From: Histomonas meleagridis 2922-C6/04-290x
Taxonomy: Eukaryota; Protista; Parabasalia
Direction: 5' to 3'
Length of the DNA stretch: 64,000 bases
Assembly (NCBI GenBank): GCA_020184695.1
Contig: JAANOX010000269.1
Coordinates: forward strand, 248,001 to 312,000
The notes under the pieces: model-generated
Told to the model about the DNA's origin: nothing
Databases searched by the model: none
What the model saw: the letters and a program-made list of their open reading frames with translations, nothing else
Made by a program: the position numbers and the translations under genes
Shown here: positions 4,119 through 64,000 of the stretch, piece by piece
Numbering within the stretch: the first letter of the stretch is position 1
How the letters are laid out: the number at the start of each line of letters is the position of its first letter

Positions 4119-4668
4119 AAAAATTATTATAAAAATTGATTTTTTCTTAGAATTATTGTAAAAAGCCGATTTTTTCACATGAATAATTTAATGCCTCTAA
4201 TGCATTATTAAAGTTCTTAAAAATATTAAAGAATTGTATTAATTAGAAAGGACATTTCACAAATTTTATTTTTTTTGAAATGCACCAAAATATTTTGAAA
4301 GCAAAAATTGGTAACAGGATTCTGATTCTAATTAGTTTTTGGTTGCTAATATACTATGATAGCAATTCTTAGATATTGAAGAGTGTTATTAAAATTGATC
4401 CTAACAATTTCCAAAAATTTTTTGTTTTTTATTTCATGACAATATGAGTGTTTTTCATTAGATAGCTCTTGCCTGAAAATTATATATATGACTCAAAAAT
4501 ATCTCGTTCTGATAAATCATAACTACCCGTTGTACAAAATTAAACAAGTTATAATCCTCGAGGATGAGATTAACGTTATCCATTCAATATTGAATTTGCC
4601 GATCTAATGATATGCCGAACAAATTTCTTTGAATTTTGTCACTTTTCAGGTGCACTTTTTAGAGGCAA

Positions 4669-4676
4669 AACGGTTT
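4669..4676 (+). promoter_or_regulatory. M3-like trichomonad core-promoter motif AACGGTTT
   Basis: Matches the T. vaginalis M3 consensus RRCGGTT[T/G] just upstream of ATG 4684. Related AACGGT/ACCGTT words occur near other starts (about 19177, 20357, 32408, 35867, 36674). Confidence 0.45.
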
Positions 4677-4683
4677 ATGAAAA

Positions 4684-5469
4684 ATGACAAACAATATTTT
4701 AAATCAATCAGAAACACTCAGTGAGCTCTATCAATTCTTGGATTCAGCAAAATCAAAAGATGTATCTGATTTGGTTTTACCAGATTTGAGTCAAGTAGAA
4801 GAGATTCATTCTGAATTAAATATGAAGATTGAAGAACTTGAAAAAGAAATCAATCAATCCAAAGAAAACGAAAGGAAAACAAAAGCCATTATGGCAAAAA
4901 ACATTGAAGATTTCAACAAAGAAAAAGAAAAGCTTATTTCAAAATATGAAAAAAAATTAGCATTACAAAAGAATAATTACGAAAAAGCGCTTAAGCATTA
5001 TCAAGCCCTTCTTCAAGATTCTATCCGTGAGAAGGAAGAACTAGTTGATCAAATTGAACTTTTGTCAAAAAAAATCATTGTTACCCGAGAAGAATCATCC
5101 AAACGTGAAAAAGAGATTCAACGTCAAGCGTCCATACAGATAACACAACAGCGGGAACTTGCAATTTCACAGAACAAAGCGCAACAAAAGAAAATATATT
5201 CAAAAAAGCTCAAAACCGCCAAAGAAACCGCTTTGAAATCCTTTGAACCCGAATTGAATAGTTTACTCGAAAAGCATCAAAACGAAATAAATGAAATCAA
5301 TCAGAACCATAAAAAAGAACTAAACGAATTACGAGAAATGATAACAAAGCAAATGAATGAAGAAAGAGAACGAATTGTTGAAAACTTAAAAAAACAACAT
5401 GAAATTGAATTAAAAGAAGTCGAAGAAAGATATAAAGCGCAAATATTAAAACTAAAAGAACTGAACTAA
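4684..5469 (+). CDS. Coiled-coil protein resembling the CEP131/AZI1 C-terminal region
   Basis: Continuous heptads. KTAKETALKSFEPELNSLLEKHQNEI resembles the CEP131 ...GLEPEIQ.LI.KH motif. Confidence 0.5.
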   Translation: MTNNILNQSETLSELYQFLDSAKSKDVSDLVLPDLSQVEEIHSELNMKIEELEKEINQSKENERKTKAIMAKNIEDFNKEKEKLISKYEKKLALQKNNYEKALKHYQALLQDSIREKEELVDQIELLSKKIIVTREESSKREKEIQRQASIQITQQRELAISQNKAQQKKIYSKKLKTAKETALKSFEPELNSLLEKHQNEINEINQNHKKELNELREMITKQMNEERERIVENLKKQHEIELKEVEERYKAQILKLKELN

Positions 5470-5910
5470 GGTAACGTGAGAAATGTTTATGTTGTAAGTA
5501 AATATAACTTTTATTATTTTAAATAAATTTTTTTTTAAACATCAAATTATATTGTTAACTAAGAAAAATAAAACCTTTTATCATGTTTGATGAACAGTAA
5601 TCATTTATTCAACTGCATTAGTCCTAATGCTTTTGTAATTACATGTGTGGGTAAAATCATGATGCGATATGTTGTTGTCTCTTATATAAAATATTTTGTT
5701 AATGTAATTATGTTAGGGTAATGTATAAAAATAACATCTGCAAAAAAATAAATGGTCACGATTTTTAAAAAACAAAATTCGAAGGTTATTATACATTATA
5801 TAATATGTTTTTTAATGAGCATAATTTTCTTCCTTTTTATTTCGAAATAAAGAAATATCAGATTGGAGCACCCCAATATCCGAGCAAACTCTTTCAAATG
5901 CTAACAAAAG

Positions 5911-7230
5911 ATGCTGGCCCAATTTCTTCTTTTTACATTTGCTCTTTCGGAAACAAATATAATAAATACAGAAGTTAACAGAAAATACAGTATAAAAGAT
6001 GATCTAATAGTAGTTAATGTTTTAGTTAAAGTTTTAAACCAAGGTGAACCATTTTCAAAATACACTTTCACAATTCCGGATCGCGAAAATCAGCATATTG
6101 GACATACAACAGCTTCTTTTTCAACAAATAACATACGTTCATTCGACAAATCACTTCCAATTTCTGTAAATGGTAATGAGTACACTGTTGATCTTCAGAA
6201 AGAAATACCAAATGGAGAAGAATTCACGTTATACTTTTCTTATACATTAGGTGATTACTTGTTGTTCATAAAGCAAAAAGTTTCATTAAATCAACGAATC
6301 CAACTTTATTTCAATACAACAAAATTCTTTAAATCAAAGTACGAGACAAGGAAATCTTCTCTTTCGATCTCAGGCATTCCAAAGGCATCCATTACTACTC
6401 CGAAGCACATTCTTGAAGATTCAGGAATTCGAATACAATCGTCAATGATTATCCTGAAAGATTTGACGAACGATGATGGATCTGACTTCGAAATCGAGTT
6501 CACGACGTCCCGACCGATGATTCGTATTGATCAAATAATATCACAAACTACAGTCTCTCACTGGGGAAAGACCAAACAAAAGGCGTTCTACTCAGTGACA
6601 AACGCAGGGCCGAAGTTCACTGGTGAATTTAACAGAATTGATTTCAATCCTCGAACAACTCCATGCTTCACTCAGTCCATAGAAATGAGACCTCCGAAGG
6701 GTGCCCGTAACTTTTGGGCCTCTGATGAATCAGGGCTTCTCCAGAAAGAGCTTTCTTTGACTGGAGATAATTTATTGATTCCTCTTCGTGGTCCAATGCT
6801 TAGCAGTTGGAAGGCAACGTTTACTGCTGGCTGGACCATAGATACTTCTGTGTTTGTTTCTGGGGGATATCGCTTCGAATCTCCACTTATTACAAAATGC
6901 GTATCAGCTCCTGTAACAGAGGTTGTTGCAGAGTTTGTTCTCCCAGAAGGAGCCGTCGTCGTGGATGTACAGGTTCCAATTGATGCAAATGTCACCAAAT
7001 TCATCCAGCCACATAACCTCGATTTGAACGGCCGAACCGTCGTAAGGATTGAGGCCGACCATCTCTCGACTGAGGACGACGTGCCTGTTGTGATTTCTTA
7101 TCATTTGAGCGCACATTATCACTTCTTGAAGATATTAACATTAAGCGTCGCATTTGTCATTGTGTTTGTAGCAATAATCGTTGCAAGGCGTTTCGATTGC
7201 GGAATAGCAAATAAGCAAAAAACTCAATAA
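5911..7230 (+). CDS. RPN1: Ribophorin I (oligosaccharyltransferase subunit OST1/RPN1)
   Basis: Signal peptide; VSHWG, GPKFTGEFNRIDF, DESG and PLRGPMLSSWKATF motifs; C-terminal TM. Confidence 0.85.
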   Translation: MLAQFLLFTFALSETNIINTEVNRKYSIKDDLIVVNVLVKVLNQGEPFSKYTFTIPDRENQHIGHTTASFSTNNIRSFDKSLPISVNGNEYTVDLQKEIPNGEEFTLYFSYTLGDYLLFIKQKVSLNQRIQLYFNTTKFFKSKYETRKSSLSISGIPKASITTPKHILEDSGIRIQSSMIILKDLTNDDGSDFEIEFTTSRPMIRIDQIISQTTVSHWGKTKQKAFYSVTNAGPKFTGEFNRIDFNPRTTPCFTQSIEMRPPKGARNFWASDESGLLQKELSLTGDNLLIPLRGPMLSSWKATFTAGWTIDTSVFVSGGYRFESPLITKCVSAPVTEVVAEFVLPEGAVVVDVQVPIDANVTKFIQPHNLDLNGRTVVRIEADHLSTEDDVPVVISYHLSAHYHFLKILTLSVAFVIVFVAIIVARRFDCGIANKQKTQ

Positions 7231-7724
7231 ATCTTATCAAATGTAATTATCAATCTAATTATAAGAAAAGAAAAATTTGCAGTAACGTTAAGCCATAATA
7301 CAATATAAGCAATTTCATGTGAGATTTACAATTTTAATATGAATTATTGCATATTGAGCTATAAAGTTATAAACTTATGAAAACTTTAAATTTTCTTCAA
7401 AATCTCCAATTGTTGTTACATTTTCTCCAATGATAACTGTTTATAATTGGATGAATTTTGTTGTTTTCTTAAATTAAGTTTGTTTGCATATCTTAATCCA
7501 AAATTAATTTTTTATCATGTTTTAATTCTACCTAAATCGTTGTATATCACATTTCTGATGAATACTTTCCGCCTGGTTAAGGTTTATGACCCCCTTATGT
7601 CAAACTAGTTTCAACTTTACGAAATTATAAGATATTAATATAATCAATATAGTTAAGTTATTATTAAAACAAATGAAAAAATGCGCCGCTTGAATTCAAT
7701 AAAATTTATATAAACCCATAAATC

Positions 7725-9047
7725 AGGTTGCAGTTCTATTATTGGCATAACGGATTTCGATATAGTGTTTTTTGGAAATCTATTTAATCGCATTTTGGGA
7801 TTGTACATCATTAACAAATATTAAAATTCCTAATTCAGTTACATCAATTGAAACTTATACATTTGGCAATTGCTATAAATTAGAAAAAATAAAAATCGGT
7901 GAAAATGTTGAATCAATTGGAGATTATGTATTCTTTATGTGTTCATCTTTAAGTAATATAGAAATTCCATATGCAGTTACATCGATTGGAAGGCATGTAT
8001 TTGAACGTTGTAAGTCATTAATTAATATCGATATTCCAAATGCAGTTACATTAATTAGTAATGCTGAATTTTTTATTGCGAATCATTAATTAAGATCACA
8101 ATTCCAAATTTAGTTAAAACAATTGAAACTGAAACATTTTCAAATTGCTATAAATTAGAAACGATTAAAATTGGTGAAAATGTTGCAACAATTGAATATA
8201 AAGCATTTTATTATTGTCAAGATTTAAAATGTATTTATTTTACAGGCCACAAATCACCAAATATAGATTCAAATGCATTTTTAAATGTGTCAGCGCAATG
8301 TGTTATGACGTCATATTTTTATGAGGCTGAATCATTTGGAGCGCTTTCAGTATCGAAAGGTTCTTCCATTGATCAATGCGATCAATATATTTGGCCAACG
8401 CATACATTCACTAAATCAAATGCGTTTATACAATCAAATACATTTACTAAGTCAAATTCATTTTCTCCAAGTAATACATTCACTAACTCAAATTCATTTA
8501 CTAAATCAAATGCTTTTACACAATCGAATACATTCACTAACTCAAATTCATTTACTAATTCAAATAAATTTACATCTTCATTTCGATTTGATGTAACATT
8601 CGTTCAAACATTATTTTCGAAACATTCCATTACATAAACAATTATTTCCAAAACGATATTACCGAAAACGATTTTTATTACTTTATTTAAATCAACATAT
8701 TTTTATTATTATTCAAATTTGATATCATATGAATATATCATTCAACAATATTCGACATATTATATTATATATTTTATACATATTATAGTTATATCTTTAG
8801 TACATTTGAAAATAGATCAGGTAAAAATAAAATGTCGAATAATCTTTTGATTGGTATTATCTGTGGTTCAATCTTTATCATTCTTCTTATTGTTGGTATT
8901 ATTTTGTTCTTAATTAGAAGAAATAGAAATAAAAATTCGTATGTTAAAACTGAAACAACACCTTCGAGTTCAGTCACGAAACAACAAAACATTGAAAATG
9001 TCGATGAAGAATTCAAAAATTTTATACTAAAAGAGAATGATCAATAG
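7725..9047 (+). pseudogene. Second BspA-like surface protein pseudogene, paralog of 250-1664
   Basis: TpLRRs (7772-8280), the same CIYFTG.KSP and VSKGSSI..CDQY.WPT linker, SNTFTNSNSF repeats, TM and tail at 8832-9047. Frameshift near 8065, TAA at 8635-8637, frameshift before 8832. Confidence 0.85.
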
Positions 9048-9491: not shown

Positions 9492-11296
9492 CTAAGTGGA
9501 AACTTTAGCTAGTTTGGAATTGATTAATATTCGAATTTCTTCATGACATTGTTCTGCTGCCCATATAAGTGCTGTATTAAATAATACAAATAATTTCCAA
9601 ATATTATTTTGAAACAAAAAATTAATATGATAAATATTATATAAAACATATGAATATCTTTAGCATTAATATCAATTCCTTCTTGCTCAAGAAGTAACTT
9701 CGCTATTTCTGTATGTCCTTTTTCGGCAGCGATCATTAACACAGTAAAAAATAATTTAAATAATTTCCGAATATTATTTTCATACAAAAAATTATTAAAA
9801 TAAATATTATCTTTAGTATTAATATCAATTCCTTCTTGTTTGAGAAGTAGTTTAACTATTTCAGTATGACCCTCTTCAGTTGCATTCATAAGTGCTGTAT
9901 CAAATAATTTAATTAATTTCCAAATATTATTTTGAAATAAAAAATAATAAAAATAATTATATTTAGCATTAACATCAATTCCTTTTTGCTCAAGAAGTAA
10001 TTGAACTATTTCTATATACCCTCTTATAGATGCAATAATAAGTGCAGTTATAAATAATTTAAACAATTTCCAAATATTATTTTGAAATATGAAACAATAA
10101 AAATAAATATTATCTTTAGCATTAATATCAATTCCTTCTTTATTAATAACATATTTAATAAGCTCAATGTTTCCTGATTGTGTTGATGAAATAATGATGT
10201 CTTTTGGGATTTCGTTTTCTGCAAGGAAATATTTGACAAGAAATATGTTTCCTGTTCTTGATGCAAAATTTATAACATCTTCGTTAACTTTCATTCCTTC
10301 TTTTTTTAAATATAATAAGATATCATAGTTATGGTATGAAATGCATTTAATACCTAATTCTTCTAAACTGTGGGTTTTTTCGATTTTGTTTTCATAAAGA
10401 TATTTAAAGATATCATTTTGATGAAATTCAATTGCTGCTTCATATGCATTTTGAAAAGATGAATGATTTTGTTCACATAAATGAATTATCTCAAGATTTC
10501 CACCAGCAACTGCATATTTACCTGTATTAATTACATTAGCACCATTCATAAGGAAATATTTAAAACATTTAACTGATGAAAAAAATGCTGCATAATCAAT
10601 TAATGAAACATTTCTTTGATTAATAAATGAACACATTTCATAAAGTGATGGTTCAATAGTTTGGTCAAAATCAAAATTTGTTTGTGATGATATTTCTTGA
10701 AGTTTTTCTATTTCATCATTTCGAATTATTTTTGCAAGTTCATTTGGATTATGCCCTTCTTTGATTAATTTCTTATGAAGTTCGAAATCATTCTGTGTAA
10801 GTTCTTCATAAGGAATTTTTTCTGTGATATTGAACCTCTTTATATGATAAATATTTAATATATCTTGATGATAATGAATAAAAAATGGATCTTTCATATT
10901 TTGAATAATTTTTGCTTCAATCAAATTATGATCTATCATGAAATTTAGATAATAATATGATTCTTTTGTTCTTTTTTTAAGAAGATATCGAGAAAATACA
11001 TCGGATATTTCTGATGTACACTTTTTGTCTTTCTCATGTTTTTCTATTTCTTGTAATAATCTCAAATATATCTCATAATCATTATTCCAAATGGAAAATG
11101 ATTTAAATATCATATGGCTTACAACCATATTAAAAGATATTGGATATTTATCTAAAAATTTATTAATTATGAAATTTACTGATTGATCAAAATTATTTGA
11201 GTTTAAATAAAAAATTATATCTTTGAGTGTTGTTAATATTTTCCATTCATTTTGAGGTTTTTGTTGATTTTCTTCGTTTTCTTTATCATTTAACAT
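9492..11296 (-). CDS. DUF3447-type ankyrin-repeat protein with four intron-like inserts
   Basis: ATG 11296; parabasalid-type N-terminus (SLIDYAAFFSSVKCFKYFLMNGA) followed by GIDINAKD...TALxxA repeats. The last repeat (NTALIWAAEQCHEEIRILINSKLAKVST, TAG 9492-9494) is in a different frame after an 80-nt insert. Confidence 0.8.
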
Positions 11297-59635: not shown

Positions 59636-59856
59636 ATTCATTTTGAAACATCAAATGAGATATACAAATTGTGAAAAATAAAAAAACAATGATATTTTAA
59701 ATTTATATTATTTTTTATGATTATAAGCAAAGAAAATAGATATTGTTAGCATATGAAAAGAAAATAGTAACCCTGAAGGATAAAACCATTTTAAGAAATC
59801 AAATTCCTTTTTACTTTGCCAATGCAACAATTTTTAAACGTTCGATTGTGGCAAAA

Positions 59857-61560
59857 ATGAGTTGGGGAGGTTCTGATCCACTATCTTCTGGAACAAATTT
59901 TTTGGGAGGTTCTGACCCATCATCTTCTGGGACAAATATTTGGGGAGGTTCTGACCTATCATCTTCTGGGACAAATATTTGGGGAGGTTTTGACCCATCA
60001 TCTTCTGGAACAAATACTTGGGGAGTACCCCCTGAACCAAAACAATGGTTGGATGAGCGGGGGAATTTCCCTACAAATAGTTGGCAAAATACTAATCAAT
60101 CAAATAAATCTAAAAATTCCACCTCAATTGGATCACAGAATAATACCCCTAAATCGGGATGGGGAAGTTCATCTAAAAAAGATAACAAAGTAAATGAAAC
60201 AAATGCAAAAGATAACAAAGTAACTGAAACAAATACAAAAGATAACAAAGTAACTGAAACAAACACAAAAGACAACAAAGTAACTGAAACAAATACAAAA
60301 GATAACAAAGTAAATGAAACAAATACAAAAAACAACAAAGTAAATGAAACAGTAACAGATAACAAAGTAAATGAAACAAATACAAAAAACAACAAAGTAA
60401 ATGAAACAGTAACAGATAACAAAGTAACTGAAACAAATACAAAAAATAACAAAGTAAATGAAACAGTAACAGATAACAAAGTAACTGAAACAAATACAAA
60501 AAATAACAAAGTAAATGAAACAGTAACAGATAACAAAGTAACTGAAACAAACACAAAAGATAACAAAGTAACTGAAACAAACACAAAAGATAACAAAGTA
60601 ACTGAAACAAATACAAAAAACAACAAAGTAAATGAAACAGTAACAGATAACAAAGTAACTGAAACAAATACAAAAAACAACAAAGTAAATGAAACAGTAA
60701 CAGATAACAAAGTAACTGAAACAAACACAAAAGATAACAAAGTAACTGAAACAAACACAAAAGATAACAAAGTAACTGAAACAAATACAAAAAACAACAA
60801 AGTAAATGAAACAGTAACAGATAACAAAGTAACTGAAACAAATACAAAAAACAACAAAGTAAATGAAACAAACGCAAAAAACAACAAAGTAACTGAAACA
60901 AATACAAAAGACAACAAAGTAACTGAAACAAATACAAAAGACAACAAAGTAAATGAAACAAATACAAAAAACAACAAAGTAAATGAAACAAATACAAAAA
61001 ACAACAAAGTAAATGAAACAAATACAAAAGACAACAAAGTAACTGAAACAAATACAAAAAACAACAAAGTAAATGAAACAAATACAAAAAACAACAAAGT
61101 AAATGAAACAAATACAAAAGACAACAAAGTAACTGAAACAAATACAAAAAACAACAAAGTAAATGAAACAAATACAAAAGACAACAAAGTAAATGAAACA
61201 AATACAAAAAACAACAAAGTAAATGAAACAAATACAAAAGACAACAAAGTAACTGAAACAAACACAAAAGATAACAAAGTAACTGAAACAAATACAAAAG
61301 ATAACAAAGTAACTGAAACAATATTAAATAAGGAAAACATACCTATTACAAAGAGTGAACAAAAATTGTCCATTCATAAAACAAAAAAGAAGCCCATTGT
61401 TGTACACACATATGGATTACCCTCACAGTTTTGTATATCATATTGTTATACAATGAAGGCATGCAATAAACACATGACAACAGAACAAATTGAGCAAGCT
61501 GTCCATAAAGCAGCTCAAACACTTCAACCTTGGATGAAGTCCGGATGTATAAATAAATAA
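59857..61560 (+). CDS. Low-complexity repeat protein: WGG repeats, long ETNTKDNKV(T/N) array, short unique C-terminus
   Basis: ATG 59857; the frame stays open through about 1.1 kb of repeats; unique C-terminal ~75 aa. Confidence 0.7.
   Translation: MSWGGSDPLSSGTNFLGGSDPSSSGTNIWGGSDLSSSGTNIWGGFDPSSSGTNTWGVPPEPKQWLDERGNFPTNSWQNTNQSNKSKNSTSIGSQNNTPKSGWGSSSKKDNKVNETNAKDNKVTETNTKDNKVTETNTKDNKVTETNTKDNKVNETNTKNNKVNETVTDNKVNETNTKNNKVNETVTDNKVTETNTKNNKVNETVTDNKVTETNTKNNKVNETVTDNKVTETNTKDNKVTETNTKDNKVTETNTKNNKVNETVTDNKVTETNTKNNKVNETVTDNKVTETNTKDNKVTETNTKDNKVTETNTKNNKVNETVTDNKVTETNTKNNKVNETNAKNNKVTETNTKDNKVTETNTKDNKVNETNTKNNKVNETNTKNNKVNETNTKDNKVTETNTKNNKVNETNTKNNKVNETNTKDNKVTETNTKNNKVNETNTKDNKVNETNTKNNKVNETNTKDNKVTETNTKDNKVTETNTKDNKVTETILNKENIPITKSEQKLSIHKTKKKPIVVHTYGLPSQFCISYCYTMKACNKHMTTEQIEQAVHKAAQTLQPWMKSGCINK
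60181..61320 (+). repeat. Coding minisatellite of 30-bp units with interspersed 27-bp variants
   Basis: GATAACAAAGTAA(C/A)TGAAACAAATACAAAA units and ...GAAACAGTAACA variants; all lengths are multiples of 3. Confidence 0.95.
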
Positions 61561-61939
61561 ATATTTTTTTTTTTTTTTATATAGTGTTCAAGTCATGACC
61601 CCCTCCTATTTCACTCAATAAAAGAAATAATATTTCGATTTTTATTTAATTAGTATAGTGTTTCTTACTGTGCTCAAATGATATGTTTAAATATTGTAAT
61701 TATTTTTTAAAGTCATTTTGAAGCTTTAGGAAACTTATTGGTTTTTGACTGATTAAAATTCATGTATATTTTTTTCTCATATCTTCTTAATATTTTTTAA
61801 TTATTCCAAATGATTGAAAATTACATGAGATGAGGTTAGATGATTAATGTGAGTTTGATGCTTATTCGCATTTTAAAATTTTCATTTTATTGGTTAGAAT
61901 ATAACCTTTGTGAACCATTCACCCATTTTGTCCCCACAC

Positions 61940-64000
61940 CAACCACACACGTACCACCCACCCACACACGTACCACCCACCCACACACGTACCACCCCCA
62001 CACACACACGTACCACACACACAAGTACCACACACACAAGTACCACACACACACAAGTACCACACACACAAGTACCACACACACAAGTACCACACACACA
62101 AGTACCACACACACAAGTACCACACACACAAGTACCACACACACAAGTACCACACACACAAGTACCACACACACAAGTACCACACACACAAGTACCACAC
62201 ACACAAGTACCACACACACAAGTACCACACACACAAGTACCACACACACAAGTACCACACACACAAGTACCACACACACAAGTACCACACACACAAGTAC
62301 CACACACACAAGTACCACACACACAAGTACCACACACACACAAGTACCACACACACAAGTACCACACACACAAGTACCACACACACAAGTACCACACACA
62401 CAAGTACCACACACACAAGTACCACACACACAAGTACCACACACACAAGTACCACACACACAAGTACCACACACACACAAGTACCACACACACAAGTACC
62501 ACACACACAAGTACCACACACACAAGTACCACACACACAAGTACCACACACACAAGTACCACACACACAAGTACCACACACACAAGTACCACACACACAA
62601 GTACCACACACACAAGTACCACACACACAAGTACCACACACACAAGTACCACACACACAAGTACCACACACACAAGTACCACACACACAAGTACCACACA
62701 CACAAGTACCACACACACAAGTACCACACACACAAGTAACCACACACACAAGTACCACACACACAAGTACCACACACACACAAGTACCACACACACAAGT
62801 ACCACACACACAAGTACCACACACACAAGTACCACACACACAAGTACCACACACACAAGTACCACACACACAAGTACCACACACACAAGTACCACACACA
62901 CAAGTACCACACACACAAGTACCACACACACAAGTACCACACACACAAGTACCACACACACAAGTACCACACACACAAGTACCACACACACAAGTACCAC
63001 ACACACAAGTACCACACACACAAGTACCACACACACAAGTACCACACACACAAGTACCACACACACAAGTACCACACACACAAGTACCACACACACAAGT
63101 ACCACACACACACAAGTACCACACACACAAGTACCACACACACAAGTACCACACACACAAGTACCACACACACAAGTACCACACACACAAGTACCACACA
63201 CACAAGTACCACACACACAAGTACCACACACACAAGTACCCCACACACACAAGTACCACACACACAAGTACCACACACACAAGTACCACACACACAAGTA
63301 CCACACACACAAGTACCACACACACAAGTACCACACACACAAGTACCACACACACAAGTACCACACACACAACACACAAGTACCACACACACAAGTACCA
63401 CACACACAAGTACCACACACACAAGTACCACACACACAAGTACCACACACACAAGTACCACACACACAAGTACCACACACACAAGTACCACACACACAAG
63501 TACCACACACACAAGTACCACACACACAAGTACCACACACACAAGTACCACACACACAAGTACCACACACACAAGTACCACACACACACAAGTACCACAC
63601 ACACAAGTACCACACACACAAGTACCACACACACACAAGTACCACACACACACAAGTACCACACACACAAGTACCACACACACAAGTACCACACACACAA
63701 GTACCACACACACAAGTACCACACACACAAGTACCACACACACACACGCCCCACACACACAAGTACCACACACACAAGTACCACACACACAAGTACCACA
63801 CACACAAGTACCACACACACAAGTACCACACACACAAGTACCACACACACAAGTACCACACACACACAAGTACCACACACACACAAGTACCACACACACA
63901 AGTACACACAGTACCACACACACAAGTACCACACACACAAGTACCACACACACAAGTACCACACACACAAGTACCACACACACAAGTACCACACACACAA
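61940..64000. repeat. Tandem satellite, 15-bp unit AAGTACCACACACAC, running off the window end
   Basis: About 2 kb of near-perfect units with occasional extra-CA variants; degenerate 19/21-bp CGTAC units at the proximal edge. Confidence 0.97.

What the first reader, a model, noticed from the sequence alone, without database searches (positions are those of the whole stretch)
61940..64000. 15-bp (CA)-rich satellite with a telomere-like proximal gradient but reversed polarity
GTAC cores at 61951, 61970, 61989, 62010 and 62025 (spacing 19, 19, 21, 15) grade from degenerate CCACCCACCCACACACGTA units into well over 100 homogeneous AAGTACCACACACAC units. Variants are mostly one extra CA, as from template slippage. 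The other strand (GTGTGTGTGGTACTT) resembles long TG-rich yeast-type telomere repeats. However, the G-rich strand runs 5' to 3' toward the genes, the opposite of a canonical telomere at this end. It could be a centromeric or interstitial satellite, a fusion relic, or an unconventional chromosome end. The alternating CA tracts may form Z-DNA.
Basis: partly seen in the sequence, partly recalled or inferred. Interest (0 to 1): 0.75.

Follow-up and report, generated by a model that had tools for sequence, protein, structure and literature searches.

The report
Reversed-polarity chromosome-end repeat of Histomonas
A 15-base repeat sits at the outer end of at least six to eight assembled chromosome pieces of the poultry parasite Histomonas meleagridis, always pointing the opposite way from a normal telomere; it is the first concrete candidate for the still-unknown chromosome ends of this parasite group.

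Summary
From window 61934, three 19-21-bp units grade into a homogeneous 15-bp array (AAGTACCACACACAC). The array runs past the window to the end of contig C269: about 265 units, 231 of them identical and 18 with one extra CA.

The genome is the Histomonas meleagridis attenuated-strain assembly (Nanopore/Flye, polished with Illumina reads). Its paper never mentions telomeres.

The clean 15-mer occurs at only five loci genome-wide. Related variant or noisy arrays mark three more. Seven of the eight sit at a contig end or run to one; the eighth (C87) was not read. At all eight the CA-rich strand runs 5'->3' away from unique DNA (for C87 from match strand and position only).

The architecture is shared: unique DNA, then CCCACCC-type 17-19-mers, then a 15/17-mer mix, then pure 15-mers. 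On two contigs, 6-42 kb of noisy 14-16-nt periodic sequence follows. That noise looks like the same array with adenine-specific Nanopore miscalls.

No TTAGGG, TAGGG or TTTAGGG arrays and no TERT-specific domains were found.

Best reading: a chromosome-end repeat with non-canonical polarity, probably kept up by recombination rather than canonical telomerase. A subterminal satellite under an unassembled true telomere remains a serious rival.

The scan flagged this same stretch once more in an overlapping window.

The parts
61561..61933 (+). Unique AT-rich junction flank between the last ORF (stop at 61560) and the first repeat unit. Its last ~35 bases are already C/A-rich.
   Evidence: This flank has no similarity to the flanks of the other array-bearing contig ends.
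61934..62024 (+). Proximal variant zone: 19-, 19- and 21-bp units of the GTACCACCCACCCACAC(AC) type. The same type forms the basal zone at six array-bearing ends.
   Evidence: The shared unit GTACCACCCACCCACAC(AC) is seen in C269, C93, C88, C78, C211 and C204.
62025..64000 (+). Homogeneous 15-bp array (AAGTACCACACACAC)n with the CA-rich strand on +. It continues 2,021 bp beyond the window to the end of contig C269, about 4.0 kb in all.

Best explanation
The array is the chromosome-end repeat of Histomonas meleagridis. It is the outermost resolvable sequence of several chromosome arms. Each end is built as unique DNA, then a basal zone of older 17-19-bp CCCACCC-type variants (at some ends amplified into end-specific 19-, 38-, 57- or 69-bp satellites), then a 15/17-mer mix, then a pure 15-mer array of at least 4 kb and probably tens of kb. 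The strand that ends 3' at the outside is the CA-rich one, the reverse of every telomerase-made telomere.

I therefore think the array is kept long and uniform by copying between ends (break-induced replication, gene conversion or unequal exchange) rather than by a canonical telomerase. This is how the terminal satellites of some flies are thought to be maintained.

Shown: the multi-locus position at contig ends, the uniform polarity, the shared architecture and shared variant families, and the absence of three canonical repeat types.

Inferred: that the contig ends correspond to physical ends, that the noisy distal sequence is the same array, and the maintenance mechanism.

Roughly 0.75 that the array is chromosome-end-associated at all. 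Roughly 0.45 that it is itself the terminal, telomerase-independent cap.
For: (1) The genome tally of the unit dimer (431 forward, 100 reverse) is exactly accounted for by five contigs: C269 226, C93 203 and C59 2 on the forward strand; C78 23 and C204 77 on the reverse strand. Related arrays lie on C88 and C211, and noise-only matches on C87.
(2) At all 8 loci the C-rich strand runs 5'->3' away from unique DNA; for C87 this rests on match strand and position only. C269, C59, C88, C78 and C211 end inside the array.
(3) The unique flanks differ, so these are distinct loci. C211 and C93 share an ~800-bp subterminal element at 84% identity. C204, C59 and C88 share 19-mer variant families, which points to exchange between ends.
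(4) There is a proximal-to-distal purity gradient. In C93, C204 and C78 the +CA units cluster in the first ~60 units, and C93 then has more than 150 nearly pure 15-mers.
(5) No (TTAGGG)4, (TAGGG)5 or (TTTAGGG)4 exists anywhere in the assembly.
(6) Pfam Telomerase_RBD and TERT_C give no match. The 46 RVT_1 matches include many multi-copy and decayed copies, and the five scanned are RVT_1-only, non-LTR-like RTs.
(7) The nine other contig ends I could read carry no terminal tandem repeat.
(8) Parabasalid telomeres are described as unknown in the literature, and the genome paper does not mention telomeres.
Against: The polarity is opposite to every known telomere. That argues either for a new mechanism or against the array being the true terminus.

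On C93 and C204 the clean array is followed by 6 and 42 kb of unresolved sequence, so the assembly never shows a demonstrable physical end.

Contigs also break in any long array, so 'at a contig end' is weak evidence of terminality.

C88 ends in a 69-bp satellite without reaching 15-mers.

The TERT negatives come from a loose first-look filter, with no positive control in a eukaryote.

Illumina polishing of multi-mapped reads may have exaggerated the array's purity.

Other satellites noted by the scan, including a 9-kb heptamer array, could not be examined.
Confidence: 0.45

Rival explanations
1. Subterminal (telomere-associated) satellite. The 15-mer array lies just inside a different, true telomere repeat that the Nanopore assembly failed to recover or miscalled.
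For: Reversed polarity is unremarkable for a subtelomeric satellite, and such satellites are uniformly oriented and exchanged between ends. End-specific amplified variants (the 69-mer on C88 and the 19/38/57-mers on C59) show satellite-type dynamics. Nanopore basecallers of that period are documented to garble telomere repeats. Reads were sheared with a g-TUBE, so reads may be shorter than arrays of tens of kb and unable to span them.
Against: No array of the three commonest telomere repeat types exists anywhere in the assembly. The 42 kb distal to the clean array on C204 keeps a 14-16-nt period to its last base and aligns to the 15-mer rather than to anything new. The 15-mer is always the outermost resolvable unit.
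Confidence: 0.27
2. A true telomerase-made telomere with inverted polarity. A telomerase with a GU-rich template of about 15 nt synthesises the CA-rich strand, and template slippage gives the +CA units.
For: The identical 15-mer dominates at five different ends. The commonest variant is +CA. Distal purity over a variant-rich base is what terminal templated addition produces. The scan also noted a TEN1-like gene and a candidate telomerase RNA elsewhere in this genome; both are unverified.
Against: No TERT-specific domain was found. No precedent exists for a C-rich 3' telomeric strand. End-specific 19-69-bp amplified units are not telomerase products.
Confidence: 0.1
3. Internal arrays (centromeric or other) arranged as mirror-image blocks. 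Contigs break on both sides, and both sides show the same polarity relative to unique DNA.
For: Arrays of tens of kb (the 42 kb on C204) are more typical of centromeres than of protist telomeres. Orientation alone cannot exclude a symmetric inverted structure.
Against: No contig shows a CA-to-TG strand switch. The 42-kb and 10-kb stretches stay C-rich on the outward strand throughout. The short simple unit and the basal variant gradient are telomere-like. The scan lists other satellite loci as centromere candidates (unverified).
Confidence: 0.12
4. Sequencing or assembly artefact: the 15-mer array is not real DNA.
For: The assembly is Nanopore R9.4/Guppy/Flye. Repeat-calling errors are documented and clearly affect the distal parts.
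Against: The clean array survived three rounds of Illumina polishing with 88% identical units. It joins smoothly to at least seven different unique flanks, and its variants are structured. Noise of the artefact type looks quite different.
Confidence: 0.03

Closest known systems
Budding-yeast telomeres (S. cerevisiae TG1-3/C1-3A; 8-25-bp units in Candida and Kluyveromyces). From established knowledge; see also PMC12449055, listed.
   Same: TG/CA-rich composition. The unit length falls in the 8-25-bp range. Irregularity comes from slippage. A variant-rich base lies under a more uniform distal array. The proximal Histomonas unit resembles C1-3A closely.
   Different: In yeasts the TG-rich strand runs 5'->3' to the end and is made by telomerase. 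Here the CA-rich strand does, and no TERT signature was found.
Telomerase-independent terminal satellites of lower Diptera (Chironomus ~340-bp units; Rhynchosciara 16- and 22-bp units; Anopheles).
   Same: Tandem arrays reach the chromosome ends. Orientation is uniform. Arrays are homogenised between ends by recombination. No strand-composition rule applies. The Rhynchosciara units are of similar size.
   Different: A different lineage, with no sequence relation. For Histomonas neither terminality nor loss of telomerase has been shown.
Divergent metamonad telomere of Barthelona sp. (TATATGGTCT), versus TTAGGG in Monocercomonoides and Skoliomonas (PMC11316075 and PMC6759080)
   Same: They show that telomere repeats in Metamonada can depart far from TTAGGG and are recognised from repeats at contig ends.
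   Different: Those repeats are reported in the conventional 5'->3' outward sense. The Histomonas unit is longer and its G-rich strand points inward.
Nanopore repeat-calling errors at telomeres (Tan et al. 2022, PMC9414165)
   Same: The noisy distal sequence behaves like the documented (CCCTAA)n to (CCCTGG)n error. It sits on the C-rich strand, is dominated by A>G, keeps the period, and alternates in patches with correct calls.
   Different: This explains only the distal noise, not the clean array or its polarity. A base modification is an alternative cause that was not separable here.

Membership tests
Telomerase-synthesised telomere repeat | Short tandem repeat at the physical chromosome termini | tested here: inconclusive
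   Arrays lie at, or run to, 7 contig ends, plus C87, which was not read. A contig end is not a proven chromosome end, and two contigs continue into unresolved sequence.
Telomerase-synthesised telomere repeat | Same orientation at every end | tested here: met
   All 8 loci have the same strand pointing outward.
Telomerase-synthesised telomere repeat | The G-rich strand runs 5'->3' toward the terminus | tested here: not met
   The outward 5'->3' strand has 6 C and 1 G per unit. The distal 42 kb of C204 is also C-rich on the outward strand.
Telomerase-synthesised telomere repeat | TERT gene present | tested here: inconclusive
   No match to Pfam Telomerase_RBD or TERT_C at E<=10. The five RVT_1 open frames scanned are RVT_1-only, non-LTR-like RTs, and many of the other matches are decayed copies. 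The pre-filter is loose and no eukaryotic positive control was available.
Telomerase-synthesised telomere repeat | Telomerase RNA with a template of more than one unit | not tested
An unverified scan note mentions a candidate telomerase RNA elsewhere.
Telomerase-independent terminal satellite (Dipteran type) | Terminal tandem arrays exchanged and homogenised between ends | tested here: met
   The same 15-mer is found at 6 ends. 19-mer variant families are shared by C204, C59 and C88. C211 and C93 share an 800-bp subterminal element.
Telomerase-independent terminal satellite (Dipteran type) | Absence of telomerase and of canonical repeats | tested here: inconclusive
   The three canonical repeat types are absent from the assembly. 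The TERT negatives are weak.
Subtelomeric (telomere-associated) satellite | A different terminal repeat lies distal to it | tested here: inconclusive
   None was seen. The distal sequence keeps a 14-16-nt period and aligns to the 15-mer. Miscalling could hide a cap.
Centromeric satellite | One array per chromosome flanked by unique DNA on both sides, so flanking contigs show both polarities | tested here: not met
   All 8 loci show the same polarity, and no strand switch occurs inside 42 kb. A mirror-image arrangement is not excluded.
Nanopore repeat-calling artefact | Noisy error repeats of similar period, biased to particular substitutions, interleaved with correct calls | tested here: met
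   This applies to the distal noise only. It is 75% identical to a perfect 15-mer array. 82% of its mismatches are transitions, and 83% of mismatches fall at A. It does not apply to the clean array.

The most novel reading that the evidence does not exclude
Histomonas, and perhaps parabasalids generally, has natural telomeres of inverted strand polarity. The strand ending 3' at the chromosome tip would be the C/A-rich one, laid down by a templated enzyme or another dedicated end-replication system. The distal array might also carry a modified base (adenine on the CA strand or thymine on the TG strand) that derails Nanopore basecalling.
Probability: 0.1. Interest if true: 0.95.

Novelty: new variant of a known kind. 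Interest (0 to 1): 0.62.

Why it matters
What caps parabasalid chromosomes (Trichomonas, Tritrichomonas, Histomonas, Dientamoeba) is an acknowledged gap. A 2013 survey calls their telomeres unknown or enigmatic. Recent chromosome-scale trichomonad assemblies still report no repeat motif.

This array gives a specific probe sequence and eight specific loci, so the question becomes testable by Southern blot, Bal31 digestion, FISH and re-analysis of the deposited reads.

If the ends are confirmed, the inverted polarity would be one of two things. It could be the first protist example of telomerase-independent satellite telomeres. Or it could break the rule that the G-rich strand forms the 3' end.

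In practice the array also marks true chromosome arms for scaffolding this genome. And it flags tens of kb of miscalled sequence in the public assembly.

Tried and rejected
1. Coding repeat. All six frames of the array are open. But +CA units shift the frame, the array lies at 8 contig-end loci, and it has no Pfam content. Rejected.

2. Relatives in other data. One metagenome scan found a single contig (VFQP010003256.1, locus L057) with 6.4 copies of the same 15-mer. They lie inside a 565-aa low-complexity ORF in 50%-GC DNA, so I take this as coincidence. I cannot tell that contig's organism and did not pursue it.

3. Canonical telomere arrays (TTAGGG, TAGGG, TTTAGGG): none.

4. TERT. The Pfam RBD and C-terminal domains gave nothing. 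The RVT_1 hits scanned are retroelement-type.

5. Rfam on the window: nothing. tRNAs in the window: none.

6. The idea that the distal GC-rich 14-mer is a second real satellite. I downgraded it after the alignment and patch analysis.

7. Steps that could not be run:
As a result C87, the weaker RVT_1 loci and further contig ends were not read.
That stretch has no reference, so the step was left out.
- A telomerase-RNA template search needs the whole genome and was not possible.

Full report
**What is there.** The window's last 2 kb is a tandem array, exactly as described. GTAC cores sit at 61951, 61970, 61989, 62010 and 62025. TRF finds a 19-bp array at 61934-62020 and a 15-bp array at 61998-64000, the latter with 132.8 copies at 96% matches. 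The window is C269:248001-312000 of a 43,133,364-bp, 281-contig genome. The contig ends at 314,021 and the array runs unchanged to its last base. Split at GTACC, the array gives 261 intervals (about 265 repeat units). Of these, 231 are the exact unit, 18 have one extra CA, and the rest are singletons. The + strand is CA-rich, so the TG-rich strand points 5'->3' toward the genes. The frame-shifting +CA units and the multi-locus terminal position rule out a coding repeat, although every frame is open.

**Organism and data quality.** I checked this against Palmieri et al. 2021 (PMC8529796). The attenuated strain has 281 contigs, 43,133,364 bp and an N50 of 314,021 bp, which is the length of C269. 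The assembly is Nanopore R9.4 with Guppy and Flye --meta, followed by three racon rounds with Illumina reads. Libraries were sheared with a g-TUBE. The paper contains no occurrence of 'telomer' or 'chromosome'.

**Census.** The unit dimer occurs 431 times forward and 100 times reverse in the genome, and 0 times for the backwards-read control. Counting in the stretches I fetched gives C269 226, C93 203 and C59 2 forward, and C78 23 and C204 77 reverse. These sums equal the genome tallies exactly, so no other contig holds the clean array.
- Related arrays with the same GTACCAC core lie on C88. There a 69-bp unit is repeated about 60 times to the contig end, after a run of 17-19-mers.
- C211 has about 420 bp of variants and then turns into 15/17-mers at the very end of the contig.
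- C59 has a 19-mer repeated 90 times, with interspersed 15-mers.
- The noisy form also occurs at C87:452.6-461.7 kb. I could not read that region.

On every one of these eight loci the C-rich strand runs 5'->3' away from unique DNA; for C87 this rests on match strand and position only. Right-hand ends carry the forward form and left-hand ends carry the reverse form. For a simple internal array cut by the assembler, both polarities would be expected. Eight of eight has a two-sided chance of about 1 in 128.

The unique flanks are unrelated, so these are different loci. The exceptions are an ~800-bp element at 84% identity shared by C211 and C93, and shared 19-mer variant families among C204, C59 and C88. 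Nine other contig ends that I could read carry no terminal repeat.

**Architecture.** All resolvable ends have the same order: unique DNA; a basal zone of GTACCACCCACCCACAC(AC) units, sometimes amplified into end-specific longer periods; a zone where 15- and 17-mers mix; and then nearly pure 15-mers. In C93, C204 and C78 the +CA units are concentrated in the first ~60 units, and C93 then has more than 150 almost uninterrupted 15-mers. In C269 the +CA units are spread evenly at 7%. No long shared 15/17 pattern links two ends. Multi-mapped Illumina polishing may have blurred these patterns, so I give them little weight.

**The distal 'second repeat'.** On C93 the clean array (about 4 kb) is followed by 6 kb of 66%-GC sequence running to the contig end. 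On C204 a 1.7-kb clean array is followed by 42 kb of the same kind, with only 1.6 kb of unique DNA on the other side.
- TRF sees a 14-bp consensus there with only 69% matches and 20% indels.
- The 14-16-nt period persists across the whole 42 kb.
- The near-distal consensus differs from the 15-mer by four transitions and one deletion.
- Aligned to a perfect 15-mer array, the near-distal noise is 75% identical.
- In the near-distal C93 segment, 285 of 348 mismatches are transitions, 247 of those are A>G, and 83% of all mismatches fall at adenines. The C204 near-distal segment gives similar figures. Further out the adenines are read as G, T or C, while cytosines largely survive.
- On C204 a patch of the noisy form sits inside the clean array.

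This matches the documented Nanopore repeat-calling errors at telomeres, for example (CCCTAA)n read as (CCCTGG)n, which are worse on the C-rich strand. I conclude, as an inference, that the noise is the same array miscalled and left unpolished because Illumina reads could not align to it. A modified adenine, or a modified thymine on the other strand, would give the same picture and cannot be separated without the raw signal. Either way the arrays are longer than the clean 4 kb, and the assembly does not display a demonstrable physical end.

**What else could cap the chromosomes.** Pattern searches for (TTAGGG)4, (TAGGG)5 and (TTTAGGG)4 with 2-3 mismatches find nothing in the assembly. Pfam Telomerase_RBD and TERT_C find nothing at E<=10. 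Their prokaryotic controls are uninformative and the pre-filter is loose, so these negatives are weak. RVT_1 gives 46 matches. The five long open frames I scanned contain RVT_1 only (one with a faint zf-RVT) and look like non-LTR elements, and many of the weaker matches carry internal stops and look decayed. The literature I could reach gives no telomere motif for any parabasalid. [quoted passage not shown] Other metamonads have TTAGGG (Monocercomonoides, Skoliomonas) or a divergent 10-mer (Barthelona).

**Interpretation.** Several features together are what chromosome-end repeats look like: position at contig ends, restriction to a handful of loci, uniform orientation, a shared basal variant zone, a pure distal array, exchange of variants between ends, and the absence of canonical repeats. 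I put about 0.75 on 'chromosome-end-associated'.

The polarity is the problem. Telomerase extends a 3' end, and in all known cases that strand is the G-rich one. With no TERT signature, and with clear satellite-type amplification at some ends (the 69-mer and the 19/38/57-mers), I favour a terminal array maintained by recombination between ends, as in some Diptera (from my own knowledge). I give this about 0.45 as a full statement.

The main rival, at about 0.27, is a subterminal satellite under a true telomere that this Nanopore assembly lost or garbled. A telomerase with an inverted template gets about 0.1. Mirror-image internal arrays get about 0.12. A pure artefact gets about 0.03.

**Surroundings.** Genes run normally almost up to the array: an adenylate cyclase with PAS domains, a GH20 hexosaminidase, a UBR-box protein and a protein kinase. 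A 605-codon ORF made largely of a 10-residue repeat ends 370 bp before the first unit. The window holds no Rfam family and no tRNA.

The single metagenome hit (L057) is an unrelated coding repeat of unknown origin, and I did not follow it further.

Noticed in passing
window 59743-61560 (+), with repeats at 59862-60025 and 60177-61321: A 605-codon ORF ends 370 bp before the array. It consists largely of about 39 copies of a 30-bp (10-residue, KDNKVTETNT-like) repeat, preceded by about 4 copies of a 39-bp repeat. It has no Pfam match. It could be a repetitive surface or secreted protein, or a non-coding minisatellite.
   Followed up: partly
G000 C93:137,100-143,369; C204:1-42,000; C87:~452,600-461,700: Tens of kb of 66%-GC, 14-16-nt periodic, very noisy sequence in the public assembly. 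It aligns to the 15-mer with adenine-specific substitutions. It is probably miscalled Nanopore sequence, or a sign of a modified base, rather than real sequence as written.
   Followed up: partly
G000, 46 RVT_1 matches, e.g. C11:481265-481915, C49:1052-1825, C56:1577-2371, C20:1823-2587, C251:443-904, C269:4089-4568 and 10120-10770 (loci L040-L047): There are many more reverse-transcriptase open frames (up to ~1,500 aa, RVT_1 only, non-LTR-like) than the 23 retroelements (2.6 kb) reported in the genome paper. Several lie within 0.4-5 kb of contig ends. It is unclear whether this reflects assembly breaks at repeats or end-targeted elements.
   Followed up: partly
L037 (C88:78000-86639), positions 4391-8640: At this end the basal telomere-like unit has captured about 50 bp of unrelated sequence and been amplified as a 69-bp unit about 60 times (99% identity in blocks), with 138- and 207-bp higher-order periods.
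   Followed up: partly
C211 subterminal flank (within L039, just inside the array) versus C93 subterminal flank (L035 ~450-1240): An ~800-bp subterminal element at 84% identity is shared by two otherwise unrelated array-bearing ends.
   Followed up: no
L032 (C269:1-3000), positions 2-74: The other end of the contig starts with a tRNA-Ile(GAT) gene at its second base and has RT-bearing elements within the next 10 kb. It is an ordinary assembly break, not a second array.
   Followed up: partly
L057 (metagenome contig VFQP010003256.1), positions 4946-5041: The identical 15-mer occurs 6.4 times inside a 565-aa low-complexity ORF in 50%-GC DNA of unknown origin. I take it as a coincidental pentapeptide-coding repeat.
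   Followed up: partly
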